Assembly: GCF_947568905.1 (NCBI RefSeq) | Contig: NC_079171.1 | Span: forward strand, 10,230,001-10,294,000 | DNA length: 64,000 nucleotides | Origin: Ostrea edulis | Taxonomy: Eukaryota | Direction: 5' to 3' | Shown: piece by piece, positions 1 through 64,000 of the stretch | Position numbering within the stretch: position 1 is the first letter of the stretch | Layout: each line of letters starts with the position of its first letter | Notes under the pieces: generated by a model | What the model was told of the DNA's origin: nothing | Database searches by the model: none | What the model saw: only the letters and a program-made list of their open reading frames with translations | Program-made: the position numbers and the translations under genes

Positions 1-1575
1 TTACGGAAATATTTGAACTATATCATGTCAAAGACGTCTGGTCAGATTGTATAGGTAATCAAATGACTGATAAACGTTTCAATGAATCTATGAACATAAT
101 AACCCCATACCATATTGATTTAAACATACATCATGACTCAATAATAACCCGTTAAAGCTCTTCAATCTAGGTAAACATACAACGGATGTCTATTTCATAG
201 TGTTACACGTTTGTGAAACTTAAATCTGCTATTTGATCATGCGATGTTGAGAATCCCTGTTTTGTCTTCTTATCTGCAGAATGTTGAAATCTTTCAACAG
301 AGAATTTCCGAGCTTGTAGGTGATTTAAAGACATTTAATACAACACATAAGGTATCTAAACAGCTCGTCTGTGTTCATGCACTCAAGATTAGAAAAGGCA
401 TGTGTGTTGTCGATATGGTATGACTTGTTTACTAACTATATACGTCAAAGTGCCACTAGCCCCCCCCCCCCCCCCCACCCGACACCCCTGCGCCTGAAAC
501 AGTCAATAATAACGAAAAATCAACTGTACCCGACTTTGTCAGAAGTAAACCGTACGGTATCTTTGTGGCGTTTGACGGATCTAAAGGTGGACTACGTAAA
601 ATGCCACCCCCTTCTGTATTGAATATTTCTTATCGAAATGATCATTTATAGCCATTTTTCGGGTCTTCAACACTTTTAGAAAATGGGATGAAGGACGGAA
701 AACATACAACGTTTAATCCGGGTTAGATTTGATCCTCAGTACCCCTGTTTTTTCGTTAGAGACGACTAAACCCATGTTGACCTTTTTGGAACAGTCACTG
801 CATAATGCTAGCCTTTGTCGTCATTTAGGACAATGATTCTACCACAATAATGGCTATACCAGTGGGTACACAACATTGACAGCAACAGCGAGTACACAAC
901 AATGCTTGTATCAGTGGGTACAAAACAATATTTGAACTCTAAAAGCGGTTACACAACAATGACTCTAACAGCGAGTACACAACAAAGACTGTACCAGCGA
1001 GTACACAATAATGACCATCAGCGAGTAAACAATAATGTTATCAAGAAACCCCAGTTGCATACTTTACAGCATCCCATGGTTAAATTTTAATGTGATATAT
1101 TGAAATCTATCCTCCAGTTTGATGTATTGGTTTACATTGTTAGTATCTGACAGACTGAATCCAGGACAACGAAGAAGTAAAAGTTGTGGATCTTTCTCTC
1201 AGAACAGGATATGCTTATTCCTTCTAGGCACCCAACCCCACGTCTGGTATATCCACGGGTCGGTGTTTGTCCAACTATCTATTTTATGTTGCTTATAGGA
1301 GTTATGAGATTGATCCATGTTCGCCATCTTCACTGCGCAATCGTCCATTCTTTAAATCAAAACGTAGCGACATGCATTCTAAAGCTCGCATGACAATAGT
1401 TTTATCTGTGTATAACTTCCTTGTCTTTTCTGTAAAGTTTCTTGCACAAATAACATATGAAAATATACTGATGTACTTGATTTAATTAGATTTAGTCGGC
1501 CAAAATGTAGTACTGATCTCTGATTGCATACTTTTATGAATGATTCAGTAGTATATGGTATCTCTGTGTTTGTAT

Positions 1576-1835
1576 CACGTGGGGATCCGGGTAAGAATAA
1601 GTCCTCAGTATAACGTCGCTTGTCGTAAGAGGAGATTACATGGGGCAGTTGAGAATGCAAACACCAAGGTCCCCTGTCACTGCAGGTGTAGTACGATAAA
1701 AAATCACCTCTTGCTCAATGGACATAAGCGCCTAGCATAGGCCTAAGTTTTGCAGACCTTCGTTGGCAGTGGTAACGACTCTATATGAGTGAAATATTCT
1801 CTAGAGGGACGTTAAAGAATATTAATTCAATGAAT
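1576..1835 (+). mobile_element. Older copy of the structured-head SINE; head-only fragment at about 716-770 and 3' fragment at 6825-6950 (-)
   Basis: Collinear with 48053-48310 over its full length. Confidence 0.7.
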
Positions 1836-3782
1836 TTGTTTGTATTTCATATAAACGGTATACAATACTTTGGTATGTGTTCGCTCTCTATATAGACACT
1901 ATTGCATAATCAACATATAGAGCTCGCGGTGTCCGTGGTTGCCCAACTCTCTGTTACGTATTGCTCATAGGGTTTTGAGATTGATCCCTATGCATTATCT
2001 TCACCTCTCATATAAAACAGTATGTATTTGGTTTTCGTATATCAGCACTATATAAAACATTGACATTTATTTTGTATGTAAGCACAATATAAAACATCAG
2101 TATGTTTTTTGTATGTACGCACTATATAATCCATTGGTATGGAAGATATGAAATATAAAGACAACGAACATTGATCAATTTCATAACTACTATACGCAAT
2201 GTAAAATAGATAGTTGAGCAAAAAATGGGCCCCTATACACACCAGGAGTGGGATCAGATGCCTAGGAGGGGTAAACATATTTTTGGTTTGTATATAAGCA
2301 CTATATGTAACATTGGTATTTGTTTTGTATATAAGCATTATATGATGTATTGGTATATTTTTATATATCCAAACACTATACAATAAATTGGTATGTATAT
2401 TTTTCTATAGGTACTTCCCATTCCAAAATTTGCATACACATGCAGACGTTCCTCGCCAACTTTTAATGATGTGCTTTAAATAGTGATTTATACATAGTGT
2501 TTACAGTCGTAGCAATGCAAGTTTCTTATCTTACCAACATCTACTGTGGTAGTTTACTTGAGGCTTAAAGTGCAGTTTTATGTTCACACAGCATGATGAC
2601 ACTCACGTGAGATGTCATTGTACAATTTCAGGTAAATAATAAATCGTTTTATTTTCTTTCCATTCAGCACAATTATTATCAAAAGACTACTTAACATCGT
2701 GGTCCTATATGAAACATATTCAAAGACAAATATGTGAGATAATAGAAAAATGGAAAACAAAATATAAAGTAAAAACATAAAAGATACCCACGATATCAAT
2801 GGGCAACATGTGCTGAAAATATTACATGTTAAATTCCATATCATATGTCTAATCAGCAGGAATGGCCCGATATCAGCCCGATGACCGATTGCCCAATGGT
2901 TGACATGGTACCCGAGGACTGATCTAACATATGTTATGGATTTTGACATGTAATATTATATTGATCATACGCTGCACTTTCTCATGATTTAATATTTCAT
3001 ATGAACGGGGTAGTATTTGGATGTCCAAACTTGAGTTAATGAAATAGCATTCTGGTTATCATATGCAAGTTACAATTTTGCATTTTAAAGACATATCAAA
3101 GGGTATTTGATGTACCACTGTTCTGTGGTAAAAACCTCGATACAATGATTTACAATACTAAAAACTTTGGTATATTGAATCTACTTCATGGAAAATCTCT
3201 GATTTATTAATTAAACTATGGTACCGTAAGATGTACATGCAAACAAGTCATCTATCAATTATAGATTACTATGATACAACTCTCACACATTAATTTACTA
3301 CAGAAAAACATTGATACATTGAATTACAATTGTAAAACATTGATACAATGATTTTCACTAGTGAACATATAATTTCCAGCTGGTTATGAGATTGTTGCGT
3401 CTTGATTTTTATAGCGGGCTGCTCATCATAATCGTTGTCAAATATAATTCCATGATAGAAATACAGCTATCCTCCCAGTTTGTATGTGTCAGCTAGATGG
3501 TCATAACGATCGTAACACTAAGTCGTTATTTATACAATATGTGTAAAATTCATGATGTATTTATACAAACAGTGTTTAGGGTAAAAAAAAAATAGTACAA
3601 CGATTGATTGCAACCTACACATTTCTTATTTTTTCCCCTAAATTTATCCTTAAAAGTAAGTATTAGTTAAATATAATTTGACTCATGTCCATATCTATCA
3701 ATCATAACAACAAAACGTACGAATTTTAACATTGTAAAAGACCACTCCTCACGATAAATTAAAGATGTTACCTTTTGACATG

Positions 3783-47725: not shown

Positions 47726-48052
47726 ATATATGTATACATCCCGTACCGATCCGAATCAGGTGTCATACGCATCATATTGAATTTTGTTAAATCTTTGCGC
47801 AATACGACAATGATACACTTGGATTTATAAAAGTAGTATCAGATATGATAAGCACACCTTTCTTGAAAAACACAACAAACTATATTTTTCTGATTATCAA
47901 AGTGGATAATCCCACTCACGTAATTTATATCATAAAATTGGGACAGTAAATATAATACTCATTGCATCTAAATTTACTTCTTGAAATTAATATCTAAAAT
48001 GTATGCTGTAGTTCATTCAACATTAGCATATATAAACATTACTATTCCAGAG

Positions 48053-48310
48053 TCCCGTGAGTATCCTGGTTAGAATATATCCTCAGTATCCCCCTGGTTG
48101 TCGTAAGAGGCGACTAAATGAGGCAGTCCTTCGGATGAGACCGCAAAAACCGAGATCCCGTGTCACAGCAGGTGTAGGAAGATATAGATCCCTTCCTGCT
48201 CAATGGGCATAAACGCCGAGAATAGGCCTAAAGTTTGCAACTCTTCACCGGTAGTGGTGAGTGAAATATTCTCGAGAGAGACGTTAAACAATATTCAATC
48301 AATCAATCAA
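48053..48310 (+). mobile_element. SINE-like element with a non-tRNA structured head and the same 3' body/(CAAT)n tail as the 55006 SINE
   Basis: Head ...TCCTCAGTATCCCC...GTCGTAAGAGGCGACTAAATG; body CCCGTGTCACAGCAGGTGT...CTGCTCAATGG...TAGGCCT...GACGTT. Confidence 0.75.
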
Positions 48311-51300
48311 CTATTCCAAACATTCCAAGCTCGCCAACAAATATTGCAAGGAATATTGTCTAAGTATACAATGTCACGATATGTCACATACACCCGTTCA
48401 CTAATACCCACCCCCCCCCCCCCCAGAAATGTGTCTAGAACCACTAAAATATGCACATCCGATTCAGACCTTAGACCCCCTTAGACACACAGGCATTACT
48501 GCCACTCCTTCATATACACATCCGCTAATACCACCGCATCCTGCTCAGAACTGTGTGTATCCACCACGTCTACGTCTAGAAGCACGGCGTTTAGAGAACG
48601 GCACACAACATGAAGTAACACAATGCCAATTGGTCAGGAAGATCCAGACGAAGTCTCGATATCAGTGGTGATGTATTTAATTATTATTATTATTTTATTC
48701 ATTTATAAAGCGCAAAATTTCATATATTTTATATGCGCTGTACAATGTTTGTGCTACTGGTTGACTTTAACTTGACAAGATACAATTGGTGTACAGGTAT
48801 TCGTATGCTGAATCGAAATTCAGTTTACAAGAGCTTGCACATGAAATCCTTGCTATTGCACTGAATTTTGCATTCACATGGCATATTCACGATTGAACAT
48901 TTCTGAATATTCATTTCTTAATCTAATTAAAATCAGACGTATTAGATCTGTACCACATACACTGCGGAAGAAGCCGATCTATGAAATATTATTTTACTCT
49001 GTAATTAGATCTCAACTCTGGTATGTCTAGTGGTCCGTGTTTGCCACCTCTTTATTTTGTATTTCTTATTCAAATGATGAGAAAAATGAAAACAGACATG
49101 GCTCCGTTCTGTCTGAAGCGATTAACTCTAAAATCGAGTCTCTTTCATGCTTGCACGATTTTAAATATCAGCCTGCAGTGGCCAAATCCTTGTAAAAAAT
49201 GGATGTGTGTATAACCTCCCAATTTGTATCGTTATCCTGCTGGATAAAAATGTTGAGGGATAATTTTCACCATAAAATGATTTGTTCTGAAGTCTTAGCT
49301 CAGTAAAGCACTTTGCCAGCAGAACCGCAATTTTAATATGGAATGTTTCATCCTTAAATTGAATCAAAAATCCTGGAAAATTATTTATTCAATTCGTATT
49401 TCCATAAGACCATTCAAATAACGCAAATCACATTGACGATATGTACTTTGAACATTCAAATGACAAAACTAAAATAAACATTAAATGTTTGAAAAGAACA
49501 CCTTACTCTTCACGGATGGTTTCCGATTATATAGATTAAACAAAACACAACACAAAACGCACTACACTAGAGAGGGATGATATAAGTCACGCCTTTTGAG
49601 AACCATTATTGTTAATTCAAACGTCTCCATTGTAAGGCGGGTATCATTTTCTTCTTCTGATCATATCATGATATTTAAATCTGATCAACAATTCTATAAA
49701 CGATAGGTTTGATTTGGCAAAAACAATGGCGAAACTGGTGTGTCGTTCTAGACTGGATACATGTAACCAGTCTTTGACTTAATTATCTTCATTGTGGGGT
49801 ATTAAGTGATGTCTTTATTTTCAGATTATACAAACTATTACTAGAACACATCTGGAACGAGTATGTATCCGATAAAACTGATGTGTGAATGTTTATGAAC
49901 TAGATATAACTCACTACATGGAATAGAACAGTCTTGCTTTACTTAAACTATTTTCAAGGCATGACCTTTTTTTGATGAACTCGATATAAGATGTACTTTG
50001 ATACAAATTACATGAACACATTTAGAAACTGGAGCAAGGTCTGTGACTTATTAAAGTAAGTTAATGGTGTTCAAACTCCATCATTCACAAAATACATGTA
50101 TAGTACGATTATTAACAGTTTGAGGTCAATATGATTTGTTAACTACCTCAGCGATAGAGACAACTCAGCCATTTACGTTGTAAATATAAAACGATGTTGA
50201 AATTGCTTATAATATGTAAATGTAAAACGGTGTTGCGATTGCTTATGCTATTGAAACATAAATCTTATAATACTGAAACATAATATGGTGTCCCGATTGC
50301 GTATGGCATTCAACTAATTGACCGTGCACATAGGAGGAAACAAATCTAATTAGAAAAGTTCAGCATGTGCTTGACTCTTTAGAGAAAAATATAAATGGTA
50401 TAATTCCAGTAATTATTTTCACTACATACTACCATATTGCAAGTCAATTTGGTAAATAGATGCCGAATAAAGCATTCAGAAAAATGTTCTATGTCACATG
50501 TCTTGCCTGTCGACATCTGAAAACAACAACACTTAACACGGTATTTTCTATTTTTTTTACCAGCAAATAATACTACCTTGGAGTAGAGAAAAAGAGGGCG
50601 CCCAGTAACAACATGGCGAAGGACTTTAAACACAGAGTTCAGGTCGATTCAGATGTCATGGGGAGAAACCAAACAAGCTGCACATGACCGAGACAGATGG
50701 AAAACTATTGTTGAGTCCCTATGCCCCCTCAGGGGCCAAAAGGAATAAGTCAAGTAAGTCAAGGAGTAGTGTTTTACATTTTAAAAAGAAAGTATACTCT
50801 GTTTTATTCTTTCTTTTTTATTTTCAATGTGGGATGAACATTTTAACAGTGTGAGCGATTTACTTTTCTGTACCCATTTCTGCCTGAATCTCTCTTCCCC
50901 ATGTTACATAGCACTTTCTGTAACATCCGTTTTCTTACAAAATGCGTTCGTATAAATTTGCTTTAAAGAGCTTCTTCGCATTCAACATTTGCACTGCAAC
51001 GGCAGTTACTATAGAACATTTCGTCCAAACAACTTTTCTCTAGAACTATAAATCACAATGAAAATCATATTTAATTTTTATTGCACATTTTAGATGATAT
51101 AAAATTTATCGAAGAGGGAAGAGGCTTTTTTAAACATTCAAACAATGTAACAAAATGAAATCAATGAATGAAACACGTTTTCTTATATTATAACCTATGT
51201 TTTGTGGTGTATATATCAAATGGAATATACTTTCGTGCAAGAGATTTATTTTGCACTGTAGGGGGATTACTCTTTGTATGTGTCATTCACGGACATTTCC

Positions 51301-53945: not shown

Positions 53946-55005
53946 TTCGTTCTTCTGATCCTATCATGGTATTTAAACTTTATTTCAAAACTTCAATAAA
54001 CACTAGGTTTAATTTGGTAGAAGTGGTGATGCACTTTTTAAATAAAATCTAACTGATTTGTCACTTTGTATTGATTACAAAGACCAGCTTTTTGACTTAA
54101 TCATTTTCAGTGTGAGATATTAAATGTAGTATTCTCTGAGGATGGTAATCATTATTCAAAATCCTCTCAAACTATCGGTTCATTTGAAAAAAGGCTGAAT
54201 CTGAGAATACTGATTTGAGACTGCCTATTGACTAGAAACAATTGTATAAGCAGGATAAAGTGGTGTTTCATTCAAATTAGTTCAAAGGAAAATCATTTTT
54301 TCTGAAATTGGAACGAGACATTCTTTTATACAATGACATTGAAACACTAGGGAACTGGAGCACGGCGTACAACTAATAAATGTAAGTTGTTGTTCAACCT
54401 TTATCATTCTAGTAATGATATACACTTGTACAATCATTGACTGAGGTCAATACGATGAAATAGCAACCTTAGTAATTGAGGCAACTCCGTCATTTCCGTC
54501 ACATGTACCTGGAACGGTGTTCCGATTACTTATGATATTCAAACATAAAATGAGGTTAGGATTACTTATGACATTCAAATATAAAACGGTGTTCCGATTC
54601 CAAATAATATTCAAATATAAAACGGCGTTCTGATTGCTTGTATATTGAAACAAAACGCTGTTCGATTCCTTATAATATTTAAGTATAAAACGGTGTTCTT
54701 ATTCCTTATGACATTCAAATATAATTACTCGTGCACATAGGAAAAACGCAAATCTCATTAGCAAAGTCCAGAATGTGTTTATCGTTTAGGAAATAATATA
54801 AATGATATAATACCCGTAATTATTTTCACTATGTATTGAGATAAATGAAAACCATTATAATCAGTTTTGTAATGGATGCCAGATAAAGCAGTAAAAAATG
54901 TCCTCTGTTACCTGTCACCCCTGTCTACACCCAAAAAACAAACACTTTATGGGGCATTTTCTGATTTTGCTAAGTAGTAAATACTACCACCCTCAAATAG
55001 TGTTT

Positions 55006-55352
55006 CACCGCCGCGGTGACCGAGAAGTTAGAGCGTTCACCCCGCATGCGGAAGGTCAAGGTCCGAATCCAGACCGCGACAGACTTAAGTCGTTAAAACA
55101 GGTAGTGACCGTTCCATCGCCAAACGCTCGGCATCAGATGTGAATTTCACGGGTCTTCGGAGATGACCTTAAAAACGGATGACCCGTGTCACAGTAGATG
55201 TGGCACGCTAAAGAACCCTCACTGCTCAATGGCCGTAAGCGCCGAGTATAGGCCTGAATTTGAAGCCTTTCGTCGGTCTTGGTGACGTCTCCATATGAGT
55301 GAAAAAATATCGAGCGAGACGTTAAGCAAGATACAATCAATCAATCAATCAA
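55006..55352 (+). mobile_element. tRNA-headed SINE with (CAAT)n tail and TSD
   Basis: A/B-box-like head, body CCCGTGTCACAGTAGATGTGGCACG..CTGCTCAATGG, and TSD CAA(A/C)TAGTGTTTC. Confidence 0.85.
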
Positions 55353-58269
55353 CTAGTGTTTCTACATGTATGTAAACAGCCTGAGTGCACCCCAGAACGT
55401 ACCTTAAGTTCACAACATGCAATAGTTCCCATCTAAACAATTGATCGTGTAAACAAATTGCGGACAATTTCCTAAGCAGTGTTACAACAATTAAAAGAAA
55501 AGAAATAAGCGAAATGAGAGAAAAACCTCCGCAGTTGTGTTAAGTAGGACCATAGAAATATGCCAGAGGAAAAACGCATGATAAAGAGATCAATTTTTGA
55601 CAAATTCTGTACACACAGCGCTTATATACCAAAAAAAATATGTATAAATAATTAAGTGCATATTGACCTCCCATACATTTTTCACCAGACCGACAGTCTC
55701 TACATCAGCTGTATATCACGTGATCAAATATCAAGATAAAATCGCACCGTGTATGTATAAATCGCTCCATTGCCACGATATCCAGATATCAATGCAAGTT
55801 GAAGTTAAAATAACTTCAAAATGTATTAAGTTCTTAATTTGAAAAGAGATGAGAGCAAGTTCATCGTGATTTGTAACATGTCGAATGTTTGCGTTGAATA
55901 TGCAAGATGCGGCGATTTTTGCATATACGAAGTTGAATCTAGCCTGAAAAACATGTTTTCTGTTGAAGCCACAACTTGTTCCCCTAACTTTCATTTTGCA
56001 CTGAAGTTCACATGTAACATAAATCAAACATATTTCACTCAAAAACCTCGGGGTGTTGTGTCAATGATGAAATTTGTATGTACGGAAACCCTTTTTATGC
56101 AAATGAGTTCATTGTGAAAGTCACTATATACGTGCAGATTAGGGGCGATATCAAGATCACAATATAATATGAATATTACTTTAGCATGTATGTTATATAA
56201 AGAAGAAATTGAAAATATTTCAATATCAAAGAGAATTGATATAACCCATTTGACAGAAACTTTTACAGAATTGCAGCTTATTTTTTGACAGCGGTGGTAG
56301 ATAACGAAAAACTATTTTGACATTTCCAACCGCAAAAGGAATGTAGATATGTACGTCATGACCTTCATCATGACGTATTTTTCATTGTGACGTCATGTAA
56401 TGTGCCAGTATGGTAAAGTGCATTTTTTACAGCACTGATATTTATAAGGAAAGCCTTAATTCAGCCTCGTCATATCTTATTTTTTAAGTCATGGGTATAC
56501 GACTGATGAAGATCATTCTGATTGAACCTTTACAGGGGTGAACTTTTAAAGATCGTCTGTAACGATAATGGAAGCATTCTACATAATATTGTAATACCAT
56601 GTGGATTTTCCATTCTTGTATTTCCTTCCTTTAAGGATTTTGACAATTTAATTGATTTAAAGTTTGTAATCTTTTAAAATGTCCCGAATTCTTCCGGTTT
56701 TATTCTTTCTTTATTTATTTTCAATGTGGGATGTACGTTTTAACAGTACCCATCTCTGCCTGAATCTGTCTTCTCCATGTTACATAGCACTTTCTGTAAC
56801 ATCCGTTTTCTTATAAAATGCGTTCCTATAAATCTCCCTCAACAGCTTCTGTGCATTCAACATTTGCACTGCAGCGGCAGTTACTATAGGGTTTTTCATC
56901 CTAACGACGTTTCTATAGAATACATATATTTAATTGTCATGGCACCTTTTGAATGAGAAAAATATTGTTGAAGATTGACGGGGCTTTTTTAAACATTCAA
57001 ATGATGTAACAAAATAAAAACAATGGATGGAATACACAATCTTATATTATAACAAATGTGTTATCGTGCATACTTCAAAGGAAATATATTTTAGTGTAAG
57101 AGATTGATTTTGCAATGTAGGGATATTTTTCTCTTTATGTATAATTCACGGACGGTTCATAGATAAATAAATTAAACATAACACAATAGGAGTCACACTA
57201 CAGCCCAGAAAGATAATATCATTCACATACCATCTTAATGCGCCTGGGGAGCAACATTGCTGTTAATGTAAACATCGTCATTGTAAGTTATCCACCGATT
57301 CTTTCTACTGATCATATCATGGTATTTAAACTTTATTTCAAAACTTCAATAAACGATAGGTTTAATTTGGTAGAACTGGTGATGCACTTTTTTAAAAAAT
57401 CAAACAGATTTGTTACTATATGTTGATTACAAAGATCGGCTTTTTGACTTAATCCTTTTCAGTGTGAGATATTAAATGTAGTATTTTCTGAGAATGGTAA
57501 TCATTATTTGAAATCCTCTCAAACGATCGGTTCATTTGAAAAAAGGCTGAATCTGAGAATACTGATTAGAGACTGCCTATTGACTAGAAACAATGGTATA
57601 AGCAGGATAAAAGTGGTGTTTCATTCAAATTAGTTCAAAGGGCAATCTTTTTTTTTCTGAAATCGAAACGAGGCATTTTTTTTTCTACAATGACATTGAA
57701 ACACTAGGGAACTGGAGCACGGCGTACAACTAATAAAGGTAAGTTATTGTTCAAACTTTATCATTCTAGTAATGATATACAGTTGTACAATCATTGACTG
57801 GGGTCGATACGATGAATTAGCAACCTGAGTAATTGAGGCAACTCCGTCATTTCCGTCACATGTACCCGGAACGGTGTTCCGATTACTTATGATATTCAAA
57901 CATAAAACGAAGTTAGGATTACTTATGACATTCAAATATAAAACGGTATTCCGATACAAATAATATTCAAATATAAAACGGCGTTCTGATTGCTTGTATA
58001 TTGAAACAAAGCGGTGTCCGACTGCTTATAATGTTTAAGTATAACACGGTGTTCTTATTCCTTTTGACATTCAAATATAATTGCCCGTGCATATAGGAGA
58101 AACTCAAATCTCATTAGCAAAGTCCAGAATGTGTTTATCGTTTAGGAATATAATATAATACCCGTAATTATTTTCACTATGTATTGAGATAAATGAAAAC
58201 CATTATAATCAGTGTTGTAATGGATGCCAGATAAAGCTGTAAAAAAAATGTTCTACGCCTGTGACTTAA

Positions 58270-63154: not shown

Positions 63155-63242
63155 TTAATTGTCCTCCGTATGTTACCTGTCACCCCTGTCTACACCCGAA
63201 AAACAAACACTTTATAGCAAATACTACCACCCTCAAATAGTG

Positions 63243-63583
63243 TGGCCTAGAAGTTAGATCGTTCCCCCCGCATGCGGAAGGTCAGGGTTCGAATCCCGGC
63301 CGCGACAGACCTAAGTCGTTAAAACAGGTAGTGACCGTTCCATCGCCAAACGCTCGGCATCAGGTGTGAATGCCACAGGTCCTCAGAGATGACCTTAAAA
63401 ACGGATGACCCGTGCCATAGTAGGTGTGGCACGCGAAAGAACCCTCACTGCTCAATGGTCGTAAGCGCCGAGTATAGGCCTAAATTTGAAGCCCTTCACC
63501 GGTCTTGGTGACGTCTCCATATGAGTGAAAAAATCTCGAACGAGACGTTACGCAAGATACAATCAATCAATCAATCAATAAAT
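63243..63583 (+). mobile_element. Duplicate of the 55006 SINE at the orthologous site of the next tandem unit
   Basis: B box GGTTCGAATCC, same body and tail, and same flanks (cctcaaatagtg / tagtgttt.tacatgtatgtaaac). Confidence 0.85.
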
Positions 63584-64000
63584 CAAATAGTGTTTATACA
63601 TGTATGTAAACAGCATGAGTGCACTCCAGAACGTATCTTAAGTTTACAGCATGCAATAGTTCCAATCTAAACAATTGATCGTGTAAACAAATTGCGGACA
63701 ATTTGCTAAGCAGGGGTACAACAATTGAAAGAAAAGAAATAAGCGAAATTAGAGAAACACCTCCGCAGTTGTGTTAAGTAGGACCATAGAAATATGCCAG
63801 AGGAAAAACGTATTATGAAGAGATCAAATTTTGACAAATTACGTACACCCAACCCTTATATATAAAAAACATGCATAAATAATTAAGTGCATATTGACCT
63901 CCCATACATTTTTTCACCAGACCGACAGTCTCTACATCAGCTATATATCACGTGATCAAATATCAAAATAAAATCATACCGTGTATGTATAAATCTCTCC

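What the first reader, a model, noticed from the sequence alone, without database searches (positions are those of the whole stretch)
1576..1835. SINE family with a non-tRNA, pseudoknot-like 5' head (possible self-cleaving RNA)
Copies at 1576 and 48053, plus a head-only fragment at about 716-770, share their 3' body and (CAAT)n tail with the tRNA-headed SINE at 55006/63243 but have no A/B boxes. The majority head, CCCGTGGGGATCCGGGTTAGAATARRTCCTCAGTACCCC..GCTTGTCGTAAGAGGCGACTAAATGGGGC, folds by eye into an outer helix (CCCGU/AUGGG) and a hairpin GGGGAU/RUCCUC whose loop GGGU can pair with downstream ACCC (pseudoknot). A GUCG/CGAC hairpin follows, then CUAA before the closing strand. That last arrangement recalls the J4/2 strand of HDV-like ribozymes, which are established at the 5' ends of R2/RTE retroelements, but I could not fit the canonical HDV topology. 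A Pol III-independent SINE whose 5' end is released by an RNA structure would be unusual. The catalytic role is inference.
Basis: partly seen in the sequence, partly recalled or inferred. Interest (0 to 1): 0.7.

Follow-up and report, generated by a model that had tools for sequence, protein, structure and literature searches.

The report
Known oyster LP-SINE, knotted RNA head
This is a copy of an abundant oyster jumping element published in 2016 as an "LP-SINE"; its non-tRNA front end is a conserved, doubly knotted RNA module also found in other invertebrate retroposons and in two RNA-virus 3' untranslated regions, and nothing computed here shows that it cuts itself.

Summary
Window 1575-1836 and 48053-48309 are TSD-flanked copies of one SINE, and 716-770 is a truncated head. 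The first 25 bases of the element occur 2,541 times in the genome. Body and (CAAT)n tail are shared with the tRNA-headed SINE at 55006 and 63243.

The family fits the "LP-SINE" of Ostrea and Saccostrea (Matetovici et al. 2016, PMC4758252). This scan had already reached that reading on other windows of this genome (s1-271465, s1-271475, s1-279220, s1-306981, s1-292112).

I compared 13-14 independent relatives: other invertebrate retroposon families, a tetravirus-like capsid RNA and a tombus-like RdRp RNA.
- The hairpin after CCCGU covaries strongly: 89% paired against 64.5% in shuffles, with 6 of 7 pairs compensated.
- The 5' CCCG pairs with the loop CGGG, giving an H-type pseudoknot with an invariant AGAAUA loop.
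- The final GGGG pairs with the internal C-run, not with the 5' end.
- A 19-base hairpin block is invariant, but it was the search bait.

The module has no Rfam match and does not fit the HDV topology. It sits in sense orientation inside viral 3' UTRs, which argues against self-cleavage. It most likely works as RNA; the exact role is untested.

The parts
1575..1836 (+). LP-SINE copy 1, a decayed whole element. TSD TGTTTGTA at 1567-1574 and 1837-1844.
1575..1648 (+). Head of copy 1. It is mutated: S1 reads CACG and the 19-mer block (1622-1640) carries three changes.
48053..48309 (+). LP-SINE copy 2, whole element. TSD ACTATTCCA at 48041-48049 and 48310-48318, with 3 extra bases (GAG, 48050-48052) before T1.
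48054..48084 (+). Pseudoknot 1 of the head. S1 5' strand CCCG 48054-48057; S2 5' strand 48059-48065; S1 3' strand 48066-48069 (CTGG here, CGGG in the family); loop TTAGAATA 48070-48077; S2 3' strand 48078-48084.
48085..48123 (+). Second domain of the head. Short helix Q around the C-run (48085-48099); invariant block GTCGTAAGAGGCGACTAAA 48100-48118; G-run 48120-48123 (GAGG here) that pairs with the C-run (helix P).
716..770 (+). Head fragment truncated at both ends (head positions 11-65), inside a stretch that recurs at 98% identity about 15.8 kb upstream.
48124..48309 (+). Body and (CAAT)n tail shared with the tRNA-headed family. Family copies carry one internal TTTT in the body; this copy is mutated at that site.
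55006..55352 (+). tRNA-headed sister SINE with the same body and tail. It has TTT where the LP family has TTTT.
63243..63585 (+). Second copy of the tRNA-headed sister SINE, 5'-truncated. It is a duplicate of the 55006 insertion within a tandem duplication.

Best explanation
The stretch is a copy of the already described oyster LP-SINE. This is a LINE-mobilised short retroposon in which a module of about 72 nt, said to come from LINE 5' ends, replaces the tRNA head. It keeps the body and the (CAAT)n tail of a tRNA-headed sister family.

Shown here: the head is a self-contained structured RNA with two parts.
1. An H-type pseudoknot at the very 5' end. The 5' CCCG pairs with CGGG in the loop of the following 7-bp hairpin, and an invariant A-rich AGAAUA strand closes it.
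2. A second knot. A short helix presents a C-rich loop that pairs with the G-run after an invariant GUCG-UAAGAGG-CGAC-UAAA hairpin block.

The helices covary across unrelated invertebrate retroposon families and two positive-strand RNA-virus 3' UTRs, so the selected function is carried by the RNA.

Inferred: the element is transcribed by Pol II or as read-through RNA rather than by Pol III. The knot protects, marks or recruits a host factor to the 5' end, for example by stalling a 5'-3' exonuclease, which would also fix the 5' end at the foot of the knot. It is not a self-cleaving ribozyme of any known class, and probably not one at all.
For: Identity with the LP-SINE:
- TSDs, a fixed TCCCGTG start and a (CAAT)n tail.
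- Thousands of copies.
- Body and tail shared with a tRNA-headed family.
- This matches the description of Ostrea and Saccostrea LP-SINEs in PMC4758252.

Structure:
- The exact 18-mer of the head occurs in 3 short viral contigs. In L097/L098 it begins about 10 nt after the stop codon of a Peptidase_A21 (tetravirus-type) capsid ORF. In L099 it begins about 75 nt after an RdRP_3 ORF. Both are in sense orientation.
- A metagenome scan gave 120 loci falling into 31 sequence clusters at 80% identity, on contigs that carry eukaryotic genes.
- On a MAFFT alignment of 13 representatives, the hairpin is 89.0% paired against 64.5 +/- 3.3% in shuffles (0/500). Six of 7 pairs have changes on both sides. 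The covariation score is 0.782 against 0.262, and slid partners pair only 25-52%.
- On a hand-segmented set of 14: S1 is 93% paired against 81 +/- 4% (6/2000), S2 89% against 63% (0/2000), and P 95% against 57 +/- 7% (0/2000).
- The 5' strand is the best partner of the loop G-run.
- RNAalifold finds helix Q with 3 covarying pairs.
- In three retroposon families the shared sequence starts 0-1 nt before S1.

Against Pol III: the LP body has TTTT in 28/28 copies, where the tRNA-type body has TTT in 4/4.

Against known ribozymes or small-RNA heads: nothing in Rfam 15 for the oyster, viral or other versions of the module.
Against:
- Every relative was fished with an exact 18- to 20-base bait, so the invariant hairpin block is untested and the sample is biased.
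- The S1, P and Q counts rest on my own segmentation, which favours pairing.
- S1 is G/C-rich and conserved, so its signal is weak.
- The single-sequence fold is no more stable than shuffles (z = 0.21).
- The 64 oyster copies show no compensatory change. This is expected for neutrally decaying copies, so it does not bear on the structure.
- I could not verify the claimed homology to LINE 5' UTRs.
- The viral contigs are metagenomic assemblies.
- The protective or end-defining role is pure inference. A DNA-level promoter role could coexist with it, as in L1Tc Pr77.
Confidence: 0.6

Rival explanations
1. The head is a new class of self-cleaving ribozyme that releases the SINE's 5' end from read-through transcripts.
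For: - The retroposon 5' end coincides with the foot of a compact conserved pseudoknot in three independent families.
- Very strong primary-sequence conservation (the AGAAUA loop and the 19-mer block), as catalytic cores show.
- There is precedent in HDV-like ribozymes at LINE 5' ends (cited in PMC5786205, and PMC4758252).
Against: - No match to any Rfam ribozyme model at E<=10.
- The strand order S1a-S2a-S1b-S2b, then Q/P, is not the HDV nested double knot. HDV's P1 3' strand and P2 3' strand have no counterparts within the 72 nt.
- The module sits in sense orientation in viral 3' UTRs, upstream of the terminal 20-65 nt, where cleavage would detach the replication end.
- 20 of 28 copies with strict TSDs carry 1-4 extra bases before T1. 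This does not look like a single fixed cut, although reverse transcriptase can add bases.
Confidence: 0.1
2. The head works only as DNA: an internal RNA polymerase II promoter borrowed from a LINE 5' UTR (the published 'LINE promoter' hypothesis). The RNA fold would then be incidental.
For: - It lies at the extreme 5' end, and copies start at a fixed base.
- The internal TTTT argues against Pol III.
- Poly(A)-signal-like hexamers lie before the tail, AATATA in older copies (PMC4758252).
Against: - Compensatory base changes that keep three or four helices across families are not expected for a transcription-factor platform.
- The module is also present in RNA viruses, which have no DNA stage.
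- A dual promoter-plus-RNA role is not excluded.
Confidence: 0.2
3. The head is a badly decayed tRNA, 5S or other small-RNA gene fragment with a residual Pol III promoter. GGTTAGAAT resembles a B box.
For: GGTTAGAAT is 8/9 identical to the B-box core GGTTCGAAT, and the module is tRNA-sized.
Against: - No A box at a usable distance.
- ARAGORN and the Rfam tRNA, 5S, 7SL and snRNA models give nothing.
- The AGAAUA stretch is a pseudoknot loop that is conserved in RNA viruses as well.
- The consensus body holds TTTT.
Confidence: 0.03

Closest known systems
LP-SINEs ('LINE promoter' SINEs) of Ostrea, Saccostrea, Haliotis and Littorina (Matetovici et al. 2016, Genome Biol Evol 8:253, PMC4758252)
   Same: TSD-flanked short retroposon; non-tRNA head of about 70 nt; 3' tandem repeats; in Saccostrea the same body and tail as tRNA-headed sisters; oyster host.
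   Different: Nothing essential. The paper treated the head as a putative DNA promoter and did not describe its RNA fold or its occurrence in RNA viruses.
HDV-like ribozymes at the 5' ends of R2, RTE and L1Tc retrotransposons
   Same: Compact pseudoknotted RNA at the exact 5' end of a non-LTR retroelement.
   Different: Different topology: an H-type knot plus a second domain, not a nested double pseudoknot. No Rfam hit, no cleavage shown, and it also sits inside viral 3' UTRs.
Exoribonuclease-resistant RNAs of RNA-virus 3' UTRs (flaviviral xrRNA; the coremin motif, PMC10520033)
   Same: Small knotted modules in viral 3' UTRs, with a short hairpin followed by a conserved A-rich spacer. They would define a 5' end by stalling Xrn1.
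   Different: The loop UAAGAGG does not fit the YGAD or YGNNAD rule of coremin. There is no sequence or model match, and resistance is untested.
SINEU, SINE28 and other SINEs with non-canonical heads (PMC4494074)
   Same: SINEs whose heads are not tRNA, 5S or 7SL.
   Different: Those heads derive from cellular snRNA or rRNA genes. This head is shared with LINEs (per the literature) and with RNA viruses.

Membership tests
LP-SINE (Matetovici et al. 2016) | Short, TSD-flanked, LINE-mobilised retroposon ending in tandem repeats | tested here: met
   Variable TSDs, fixed 5' start, (CAAT)n tail; thousands of copies.
LP-SINE (Matetovici et al. 2016) | Head of about 70 nt that is not derived from tRNA, 5S or 7SL | tested here: met
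   ARAGORN finds none; no Rfam family at E<=10.
LP-SINE (Matetovici et al. 2016) | Head homologous to the first ~68 nt of the LINE 5' UTRs Nimb-17_LMi, I-3_DR and RTE-9_CPB | not testable with these tools
   The Repbase and figure sequences are not held and the paper has no supplements held as text. No LINE ORF followed the module in any fetched locus.
LP-SINE (Matetovici et al. 2016) | In oysters, body and tail shared with tRNA-headed SINE families | tested here: met
   Window 48124-48309 against 55140-55352 and 63370-63585.
HDV-like self-cleaving ribozyme | Nested double pseudoknot in the order P1-P2-P3-P1-P4-P2, starting at the cleavage site | tested here: not met
   The conserved strand order is S1a-S2a-S1b-S2b, then Qa-Pa-Qb-hairpin-Pb. 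No HDV or CPEB3 model hit.
HDV-like self-cleaving ribozyme | Site-specific self-cleavage leaving a 5'-OH | not testable with these tools
   Needs a bench assay. RNA-seq was not available.
Other Rfam self-cleaving ribozymes (hammerhead, twister, twister-sister, pistol, hatchet, hairpin, VS) | Match to the family covariance model | tested here: not met
   No hit at E<=10 on the oyster head, nor at E<=1 on the five contigs that carry the viral and other versions.
tRNA-derived (SINE2) head | Cloverleaf with A and B boxes at tRNA spacing | tested here: not met
   Only a B-box-like GGTTAGAAT, which is a pseudoknot loop.
coremin-type xrRNA | hp1 with a YGAD or YGNNAD loop, a conserved spacer, then hp2 (PMC10520033) | tested here: not met
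   The hairpin loop is UAAGAGG, whose second base is A, not G.

The most novel reading that the evidence does not exclude
The ~72-nt head is an undescribed class of mobile RNA module, a double pseudoknot with an invariant AGAAUA loop and a 19-nt hairpin block. It has been exchanged between positive-strand RNA viruses and non-LTR retroelements of several invertebrate phyla. It creates or protects RNA 5' ends without a cap or a Pol III promoter, either as an Xrn1-type exonuclease roadblock or as a new self-processing RNA.
Probability: 0.3. Interest if true: 0.8.

Novelty: already known. Interest (0 to 1): 0.45.

Why it matters
The element itself is ordinary and published.

What is still open is how a SINE, and the LINEs said to share its head, obtain a precise 5' end and a usable transcript without a tRNA-type promoter. 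The module keeps its helices by compensatory change, and it recurs in RNA-virus 3' UTRs. That turns the question into a testable RNA-structure problem: exonuclease resistance, factor binding, or cleavage.

It also points to exchange of RNA modules between viruses and retroelements. The motif is not in Rfam 15, and I found no paper on its fold.

Tried and rejected
- **Rfam.** At gathering thresholds on the whole window: nothing. At E<=10 on the head and E<=1 on five relatives: only chance hits elsewhere.
- **Thermodynamic signal.** z = 0.21, so none.
- **Covariation among 64 oyster copies.** Zero compensated pairs (one search used a mis-numbered hairpin and was redone). This is uninformative, because the copies decay neutrally.
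- **A LINE carrying the head in this genome.** All 30 unbiased head hits were the SINE itself or interrupted copies. nhmmer on all held DNA found no diverged head family.
- **Viral scans on the loop motif**: nothing or chance hits in phage genes.
- **The search for related loci with the two viral proteins:** only the same viruses came back.
- **ORFs downstream of the module in metagenome loci:** host genes (C2H2 zinc fingers, a desaturase), no reverse transcriptase.
- **RNAalifold on the full-length MAFFT alignment.** It missed S2 and P because of misalignment, but it revealed helix Q.
- **Literature searches** for the motif letters and for follow-up work on LP heads: nothing.
- **The extra bases at the 5' junction** do not discriminate between the mechanisms.

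Full report
**Observation**

- Copy 1 spans 1575-1836, flanked by an 8-nt target-site duplication.
- Copy 2 spans 48053-48309, flanked by a 9-nt duplication, with three extra bases before its first base.
- The piece at 716-770 covers only head positions 11-65. It lies in a stretch that recurs at 98% identity about 15.8 kb upstream.
- A 21-base head pattern hits the window three times, against none expected.

The window comes from an 895-Mb genome. In that genome the whole element has 6,991 first-look candidates. Its first 25 bases occur exactly 2,541 times and a 26-mer of the body 5,134 times. The reversed control patterns occur 0 times.

Copies begin at TCCCGTG, end in (CAAT)n, and carry target-site duplications of variable sequence. 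Body and tail are shared with the tRNA-headed element at 55006 and 63243.

**What it is**

Matetovici et al. 2016 (PMC4758252) described exactly this arrangement as "LP-SINEs".
- They are TSD-flanked SINEs of Ostrea, Saccostrea, Haliotis and Littorina.
- Their head of about 70 nt is homologous to the first 68 nt of the LINE 5' UTRs Nimb-17_LMi, I-3_DR and RTE-9_CPB.
- In Saccostrea the LP-SINE shares body and tail with two tRNA-headed families.
- The authors proposed a Pol II promoter and mentioned the L1Tc promoter/ribozyme as an analogy.

I could not align to their sequences, because they exist only in figures and no supplements are held. Every other defining feature is met. Earlier follow-ups in this scan, on other windows of the same genome, reached the same identification.

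- The head folds no better than shuffled sequence (z = 0.21).
There is not one compensated pair, and the score does not exceed the shuffles.
- This is what neutrally decaying copies give. It says nothing for or against the structure.
- Rfam 15 has no match to the head on either strand at E<=10: no tRNA, 5S or snRNA, and no HDV, hammerhead, twister, pistol or hatchet.

**Relatives elsewhere**

Following that lead, I tested it independently.

The exact 18-mer TCGTAAGAGGCGACTAAA occurs in three short IMG/VR contigs.
- L097 and L098 encode a 589-aa protein of Pfam Peptidase_A21, the tetravirus-type capsid. The module begins about 10 nt after the stop codon, and about 65 nt follow it.
- L099 encodes a 510-aa RdRP_3 polymerase. 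The module begins about 75 nt after the stop codon and ends about 20 nt from the contig end.
- In both viruses the module is in sense orientation.

- They fall into 31 sequence clusters at 80% identity.
- The contigs carry eukaryotic genes such as C2H2 zinc fingers, so they are host DNA of other invertebrates.
- One family carries the module in front of a tRNA-like part, like the pectinid MESC SINEs in the paper.

**The conserved fold**

Thirteen or fourteen representatives were compared.

1. *Hairpin after CCCGU (S2).* This was counted by the counting tool on a MAFFT alignment (A3).
   - 89.0% of cells are paired, against 64.5 +/- 3.3% in shuffles (0/500).
   - Six of seven pairs have changes on both sides.
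   - 21 cells are compensated, against 5.8 +/- 2.0 in shuffles.
   - The covariation score is 0.782 against 0.262.
   - Slid partners pair only 25-52%.
   - Examples: GGGGAUC/GGUCCUC (oyster), GUAGCAC/GUGCUAC (RdRp virus), GGAUUGG/CCAGUCU (capsid virus), GUGACCU/GGGUCAC, GCAGGUU/GUCCUGC.

2. *5' strand with the loop G-run (S1).*
   - The 5'-terminal C-rich strand pairs with the G-run that directly follows the 5' strand of that hairpin.
   - Examples: CCCG/CGGG, CGCCC/GGGCG, GCCC/GGGC, CCCCG/CGGGG, CCCC/GGGG.
   - 93% of cells are paired, against 81 +/- 4% with swapped partners (6/2000).
   - This partner gives at least 4 Watson-Crick pairs in 12 of 14 sequences.
   - Together with a 1-nt first loop and an invariant AGAAUA last loop, this is a classical H-type pseudoknot.

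3. *G-run with the internal C-run (P).*
   - The G-run after CUAAA pairs with the C-rich strand a few bases before the invariant hairpin, not with the 5' end.
   - Examples: CCUGG/CCAGG, CCUCCU/AGGAGG, CCCAU/AUGGG, UCCAU/AUGGA, CCCC/GGGG.
   - 95% of cells are paired, against 57 +/- 7% (0/2000).
   - One further family not in the counted set, F3, shows the swapped CCAGG/CCUGG.

4. *Short helix Q.*
   - Q closes around that C-rich strand. RNAalifold found it on the raw alignment, with three covarying pairs.
   - The length of the best contiguous helix averages 3.5 bp for a sequence's own partner, against 2.7 bp for partners from other families.

5. *The 19-mer block.* GUCG-UAAGAGG-CGAC-UAAA is invariant, but it was the bait.

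The S1, P and Q figures come from my own segmentation, which leans towards pairing. The S2 figure does not.

**Where the retroposons start**

In three independent families (oyster, F1 and F2) the shared sequence begins 0-1 nt before the first base of S1.

**Which polymerase**

The LP-type body carries TTTT in 28 of 28 copies. The homologous site of the tRNA-type body has TTT in 4 of 4, and the two tRNA-headed copies in the window contain no run of four T. This fits Pol III transcription for the sister family and not for the LP family. The step is an inference.

**Ribozyme?**

- The strand order (S1a, S2a, S1b, S2b, then Qa, Pa, Qb, hairpin, Pb) is not the nested double pseudoknot of HDV-like ribozymes.
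- None of the versions hits an Rfam ribozyme model.
- A module that cut at its own 5' edge would detach the 3' end of the two viral RNAs, where it sits in sense orientation. This step is an inference.
- Twenty of 28 copies with strictly defined TSDs have 1-4 extra bases before T1. That is compatible with several mechanisms and decides nothing.
- Self-cleavage is therefore unsupported, but it is not excluded without a bench assay.

**Most likely mechanism**

- Shown: the head is a conserved, doubly knotted RNA, under selection as RNA, and shared by retroposons and RNA viruses.
- Inferred: the knot protects, marks or recruits a factor to the 5' end of a Pol II or read-through transcript.
- An exonuclease roadblock would explain both the viral 3' UTR location and the fixed retroposon 5' end.
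- The hairpin loop does not obey the coremin rule (PMC10520033), and nothing was tested.
- A DNA-level promoter function may coexist.

**Not done**

- No more genome letters could be fetched.

Noticed in passing
window 48270-48300; also the tails at 55310-55335 and 63535-63560: The shared SINE tail holds GACGTTAAAC after a small hairpin. These 10 bases are identical to part of the 20-nt coremin Xrn1-resistance motif GUCCGAAGACGUUAAACUAC (PMC10520033). The hairpin loop (GAGA or GAAC) does not fit the YGAD rule, so this may be chance.
   Followed up: partly
window 1200-1320 and 1920-2000; also inside L035: Another interspersed repeat (...CCAACT.TCT.T...GAGATTGATCC...TCTTCAC) flanks SINE copy 1 on both sides. 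It also interrupts a SINE copy in L035, in reverse orientation. The family was not identified.
   Followed up: no
window 840-1030: Tandem array of units of about 30 nt (CAGCGAGTACACAACAATG...), directly downstream of the truncated head fragment.
   Followed up: no
window 700-800 versus G000:C8:10214924-10215024 (L032): This 101-base stretch recurs at 98% identity about 15.8 kb upstream, suggesting a local segmental duplication that carries the head fragment.
   Followed up: partly
window 54950-55380 versus 63190-63620: The two tRNA-headed SINE copies share their flanks on both sides. They are therefore one insertion copied by a tandem duplication with a period of about 8.2 kb; the second copy has lost the first ~20 nt of the tRNA part. 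This fits the other note on this window (s1-281947).
   Followed up: partly
L137:2723-2819, L129, L126, L161, L168 (metagenome family F4): A retroposon family in which the same knotted module is followed directly by a tRNA-like sequence (TAGTCTAGTGGTAA...). This is an LP-plus-tRNA composite head, like the pectinid MESC SINEs described in PMC4758252.
   Followed up: partly
L144, L106, L123 and about 20 others (metagenome family F3): A repeat family that keeps only the second domain of the module (helices Q and P plus the 19-mer), downstream of a (GTAA)n run. Its P helix is swapped to CCAGG/CCUGG.
   Followed up: partly
L060:1500-1720: An oyster SINE copy lacking about 36 nt, namely the Q/P/19-mer domain. 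The head goes straight from the C-run into the body hairpin. It could be a deletion variant or a subfamily.
   Followed up: no
window 48054-48060 and about 48160-48166: The 7-mer TCCCGTG that starts the head recurs inside the shared body (GGTCCCGTGTCAC). The body stretch GAGGTCCC is complementary to the head's GGGGATC, which gives alternative long-range folds in RNAfold.
   Followed up: no
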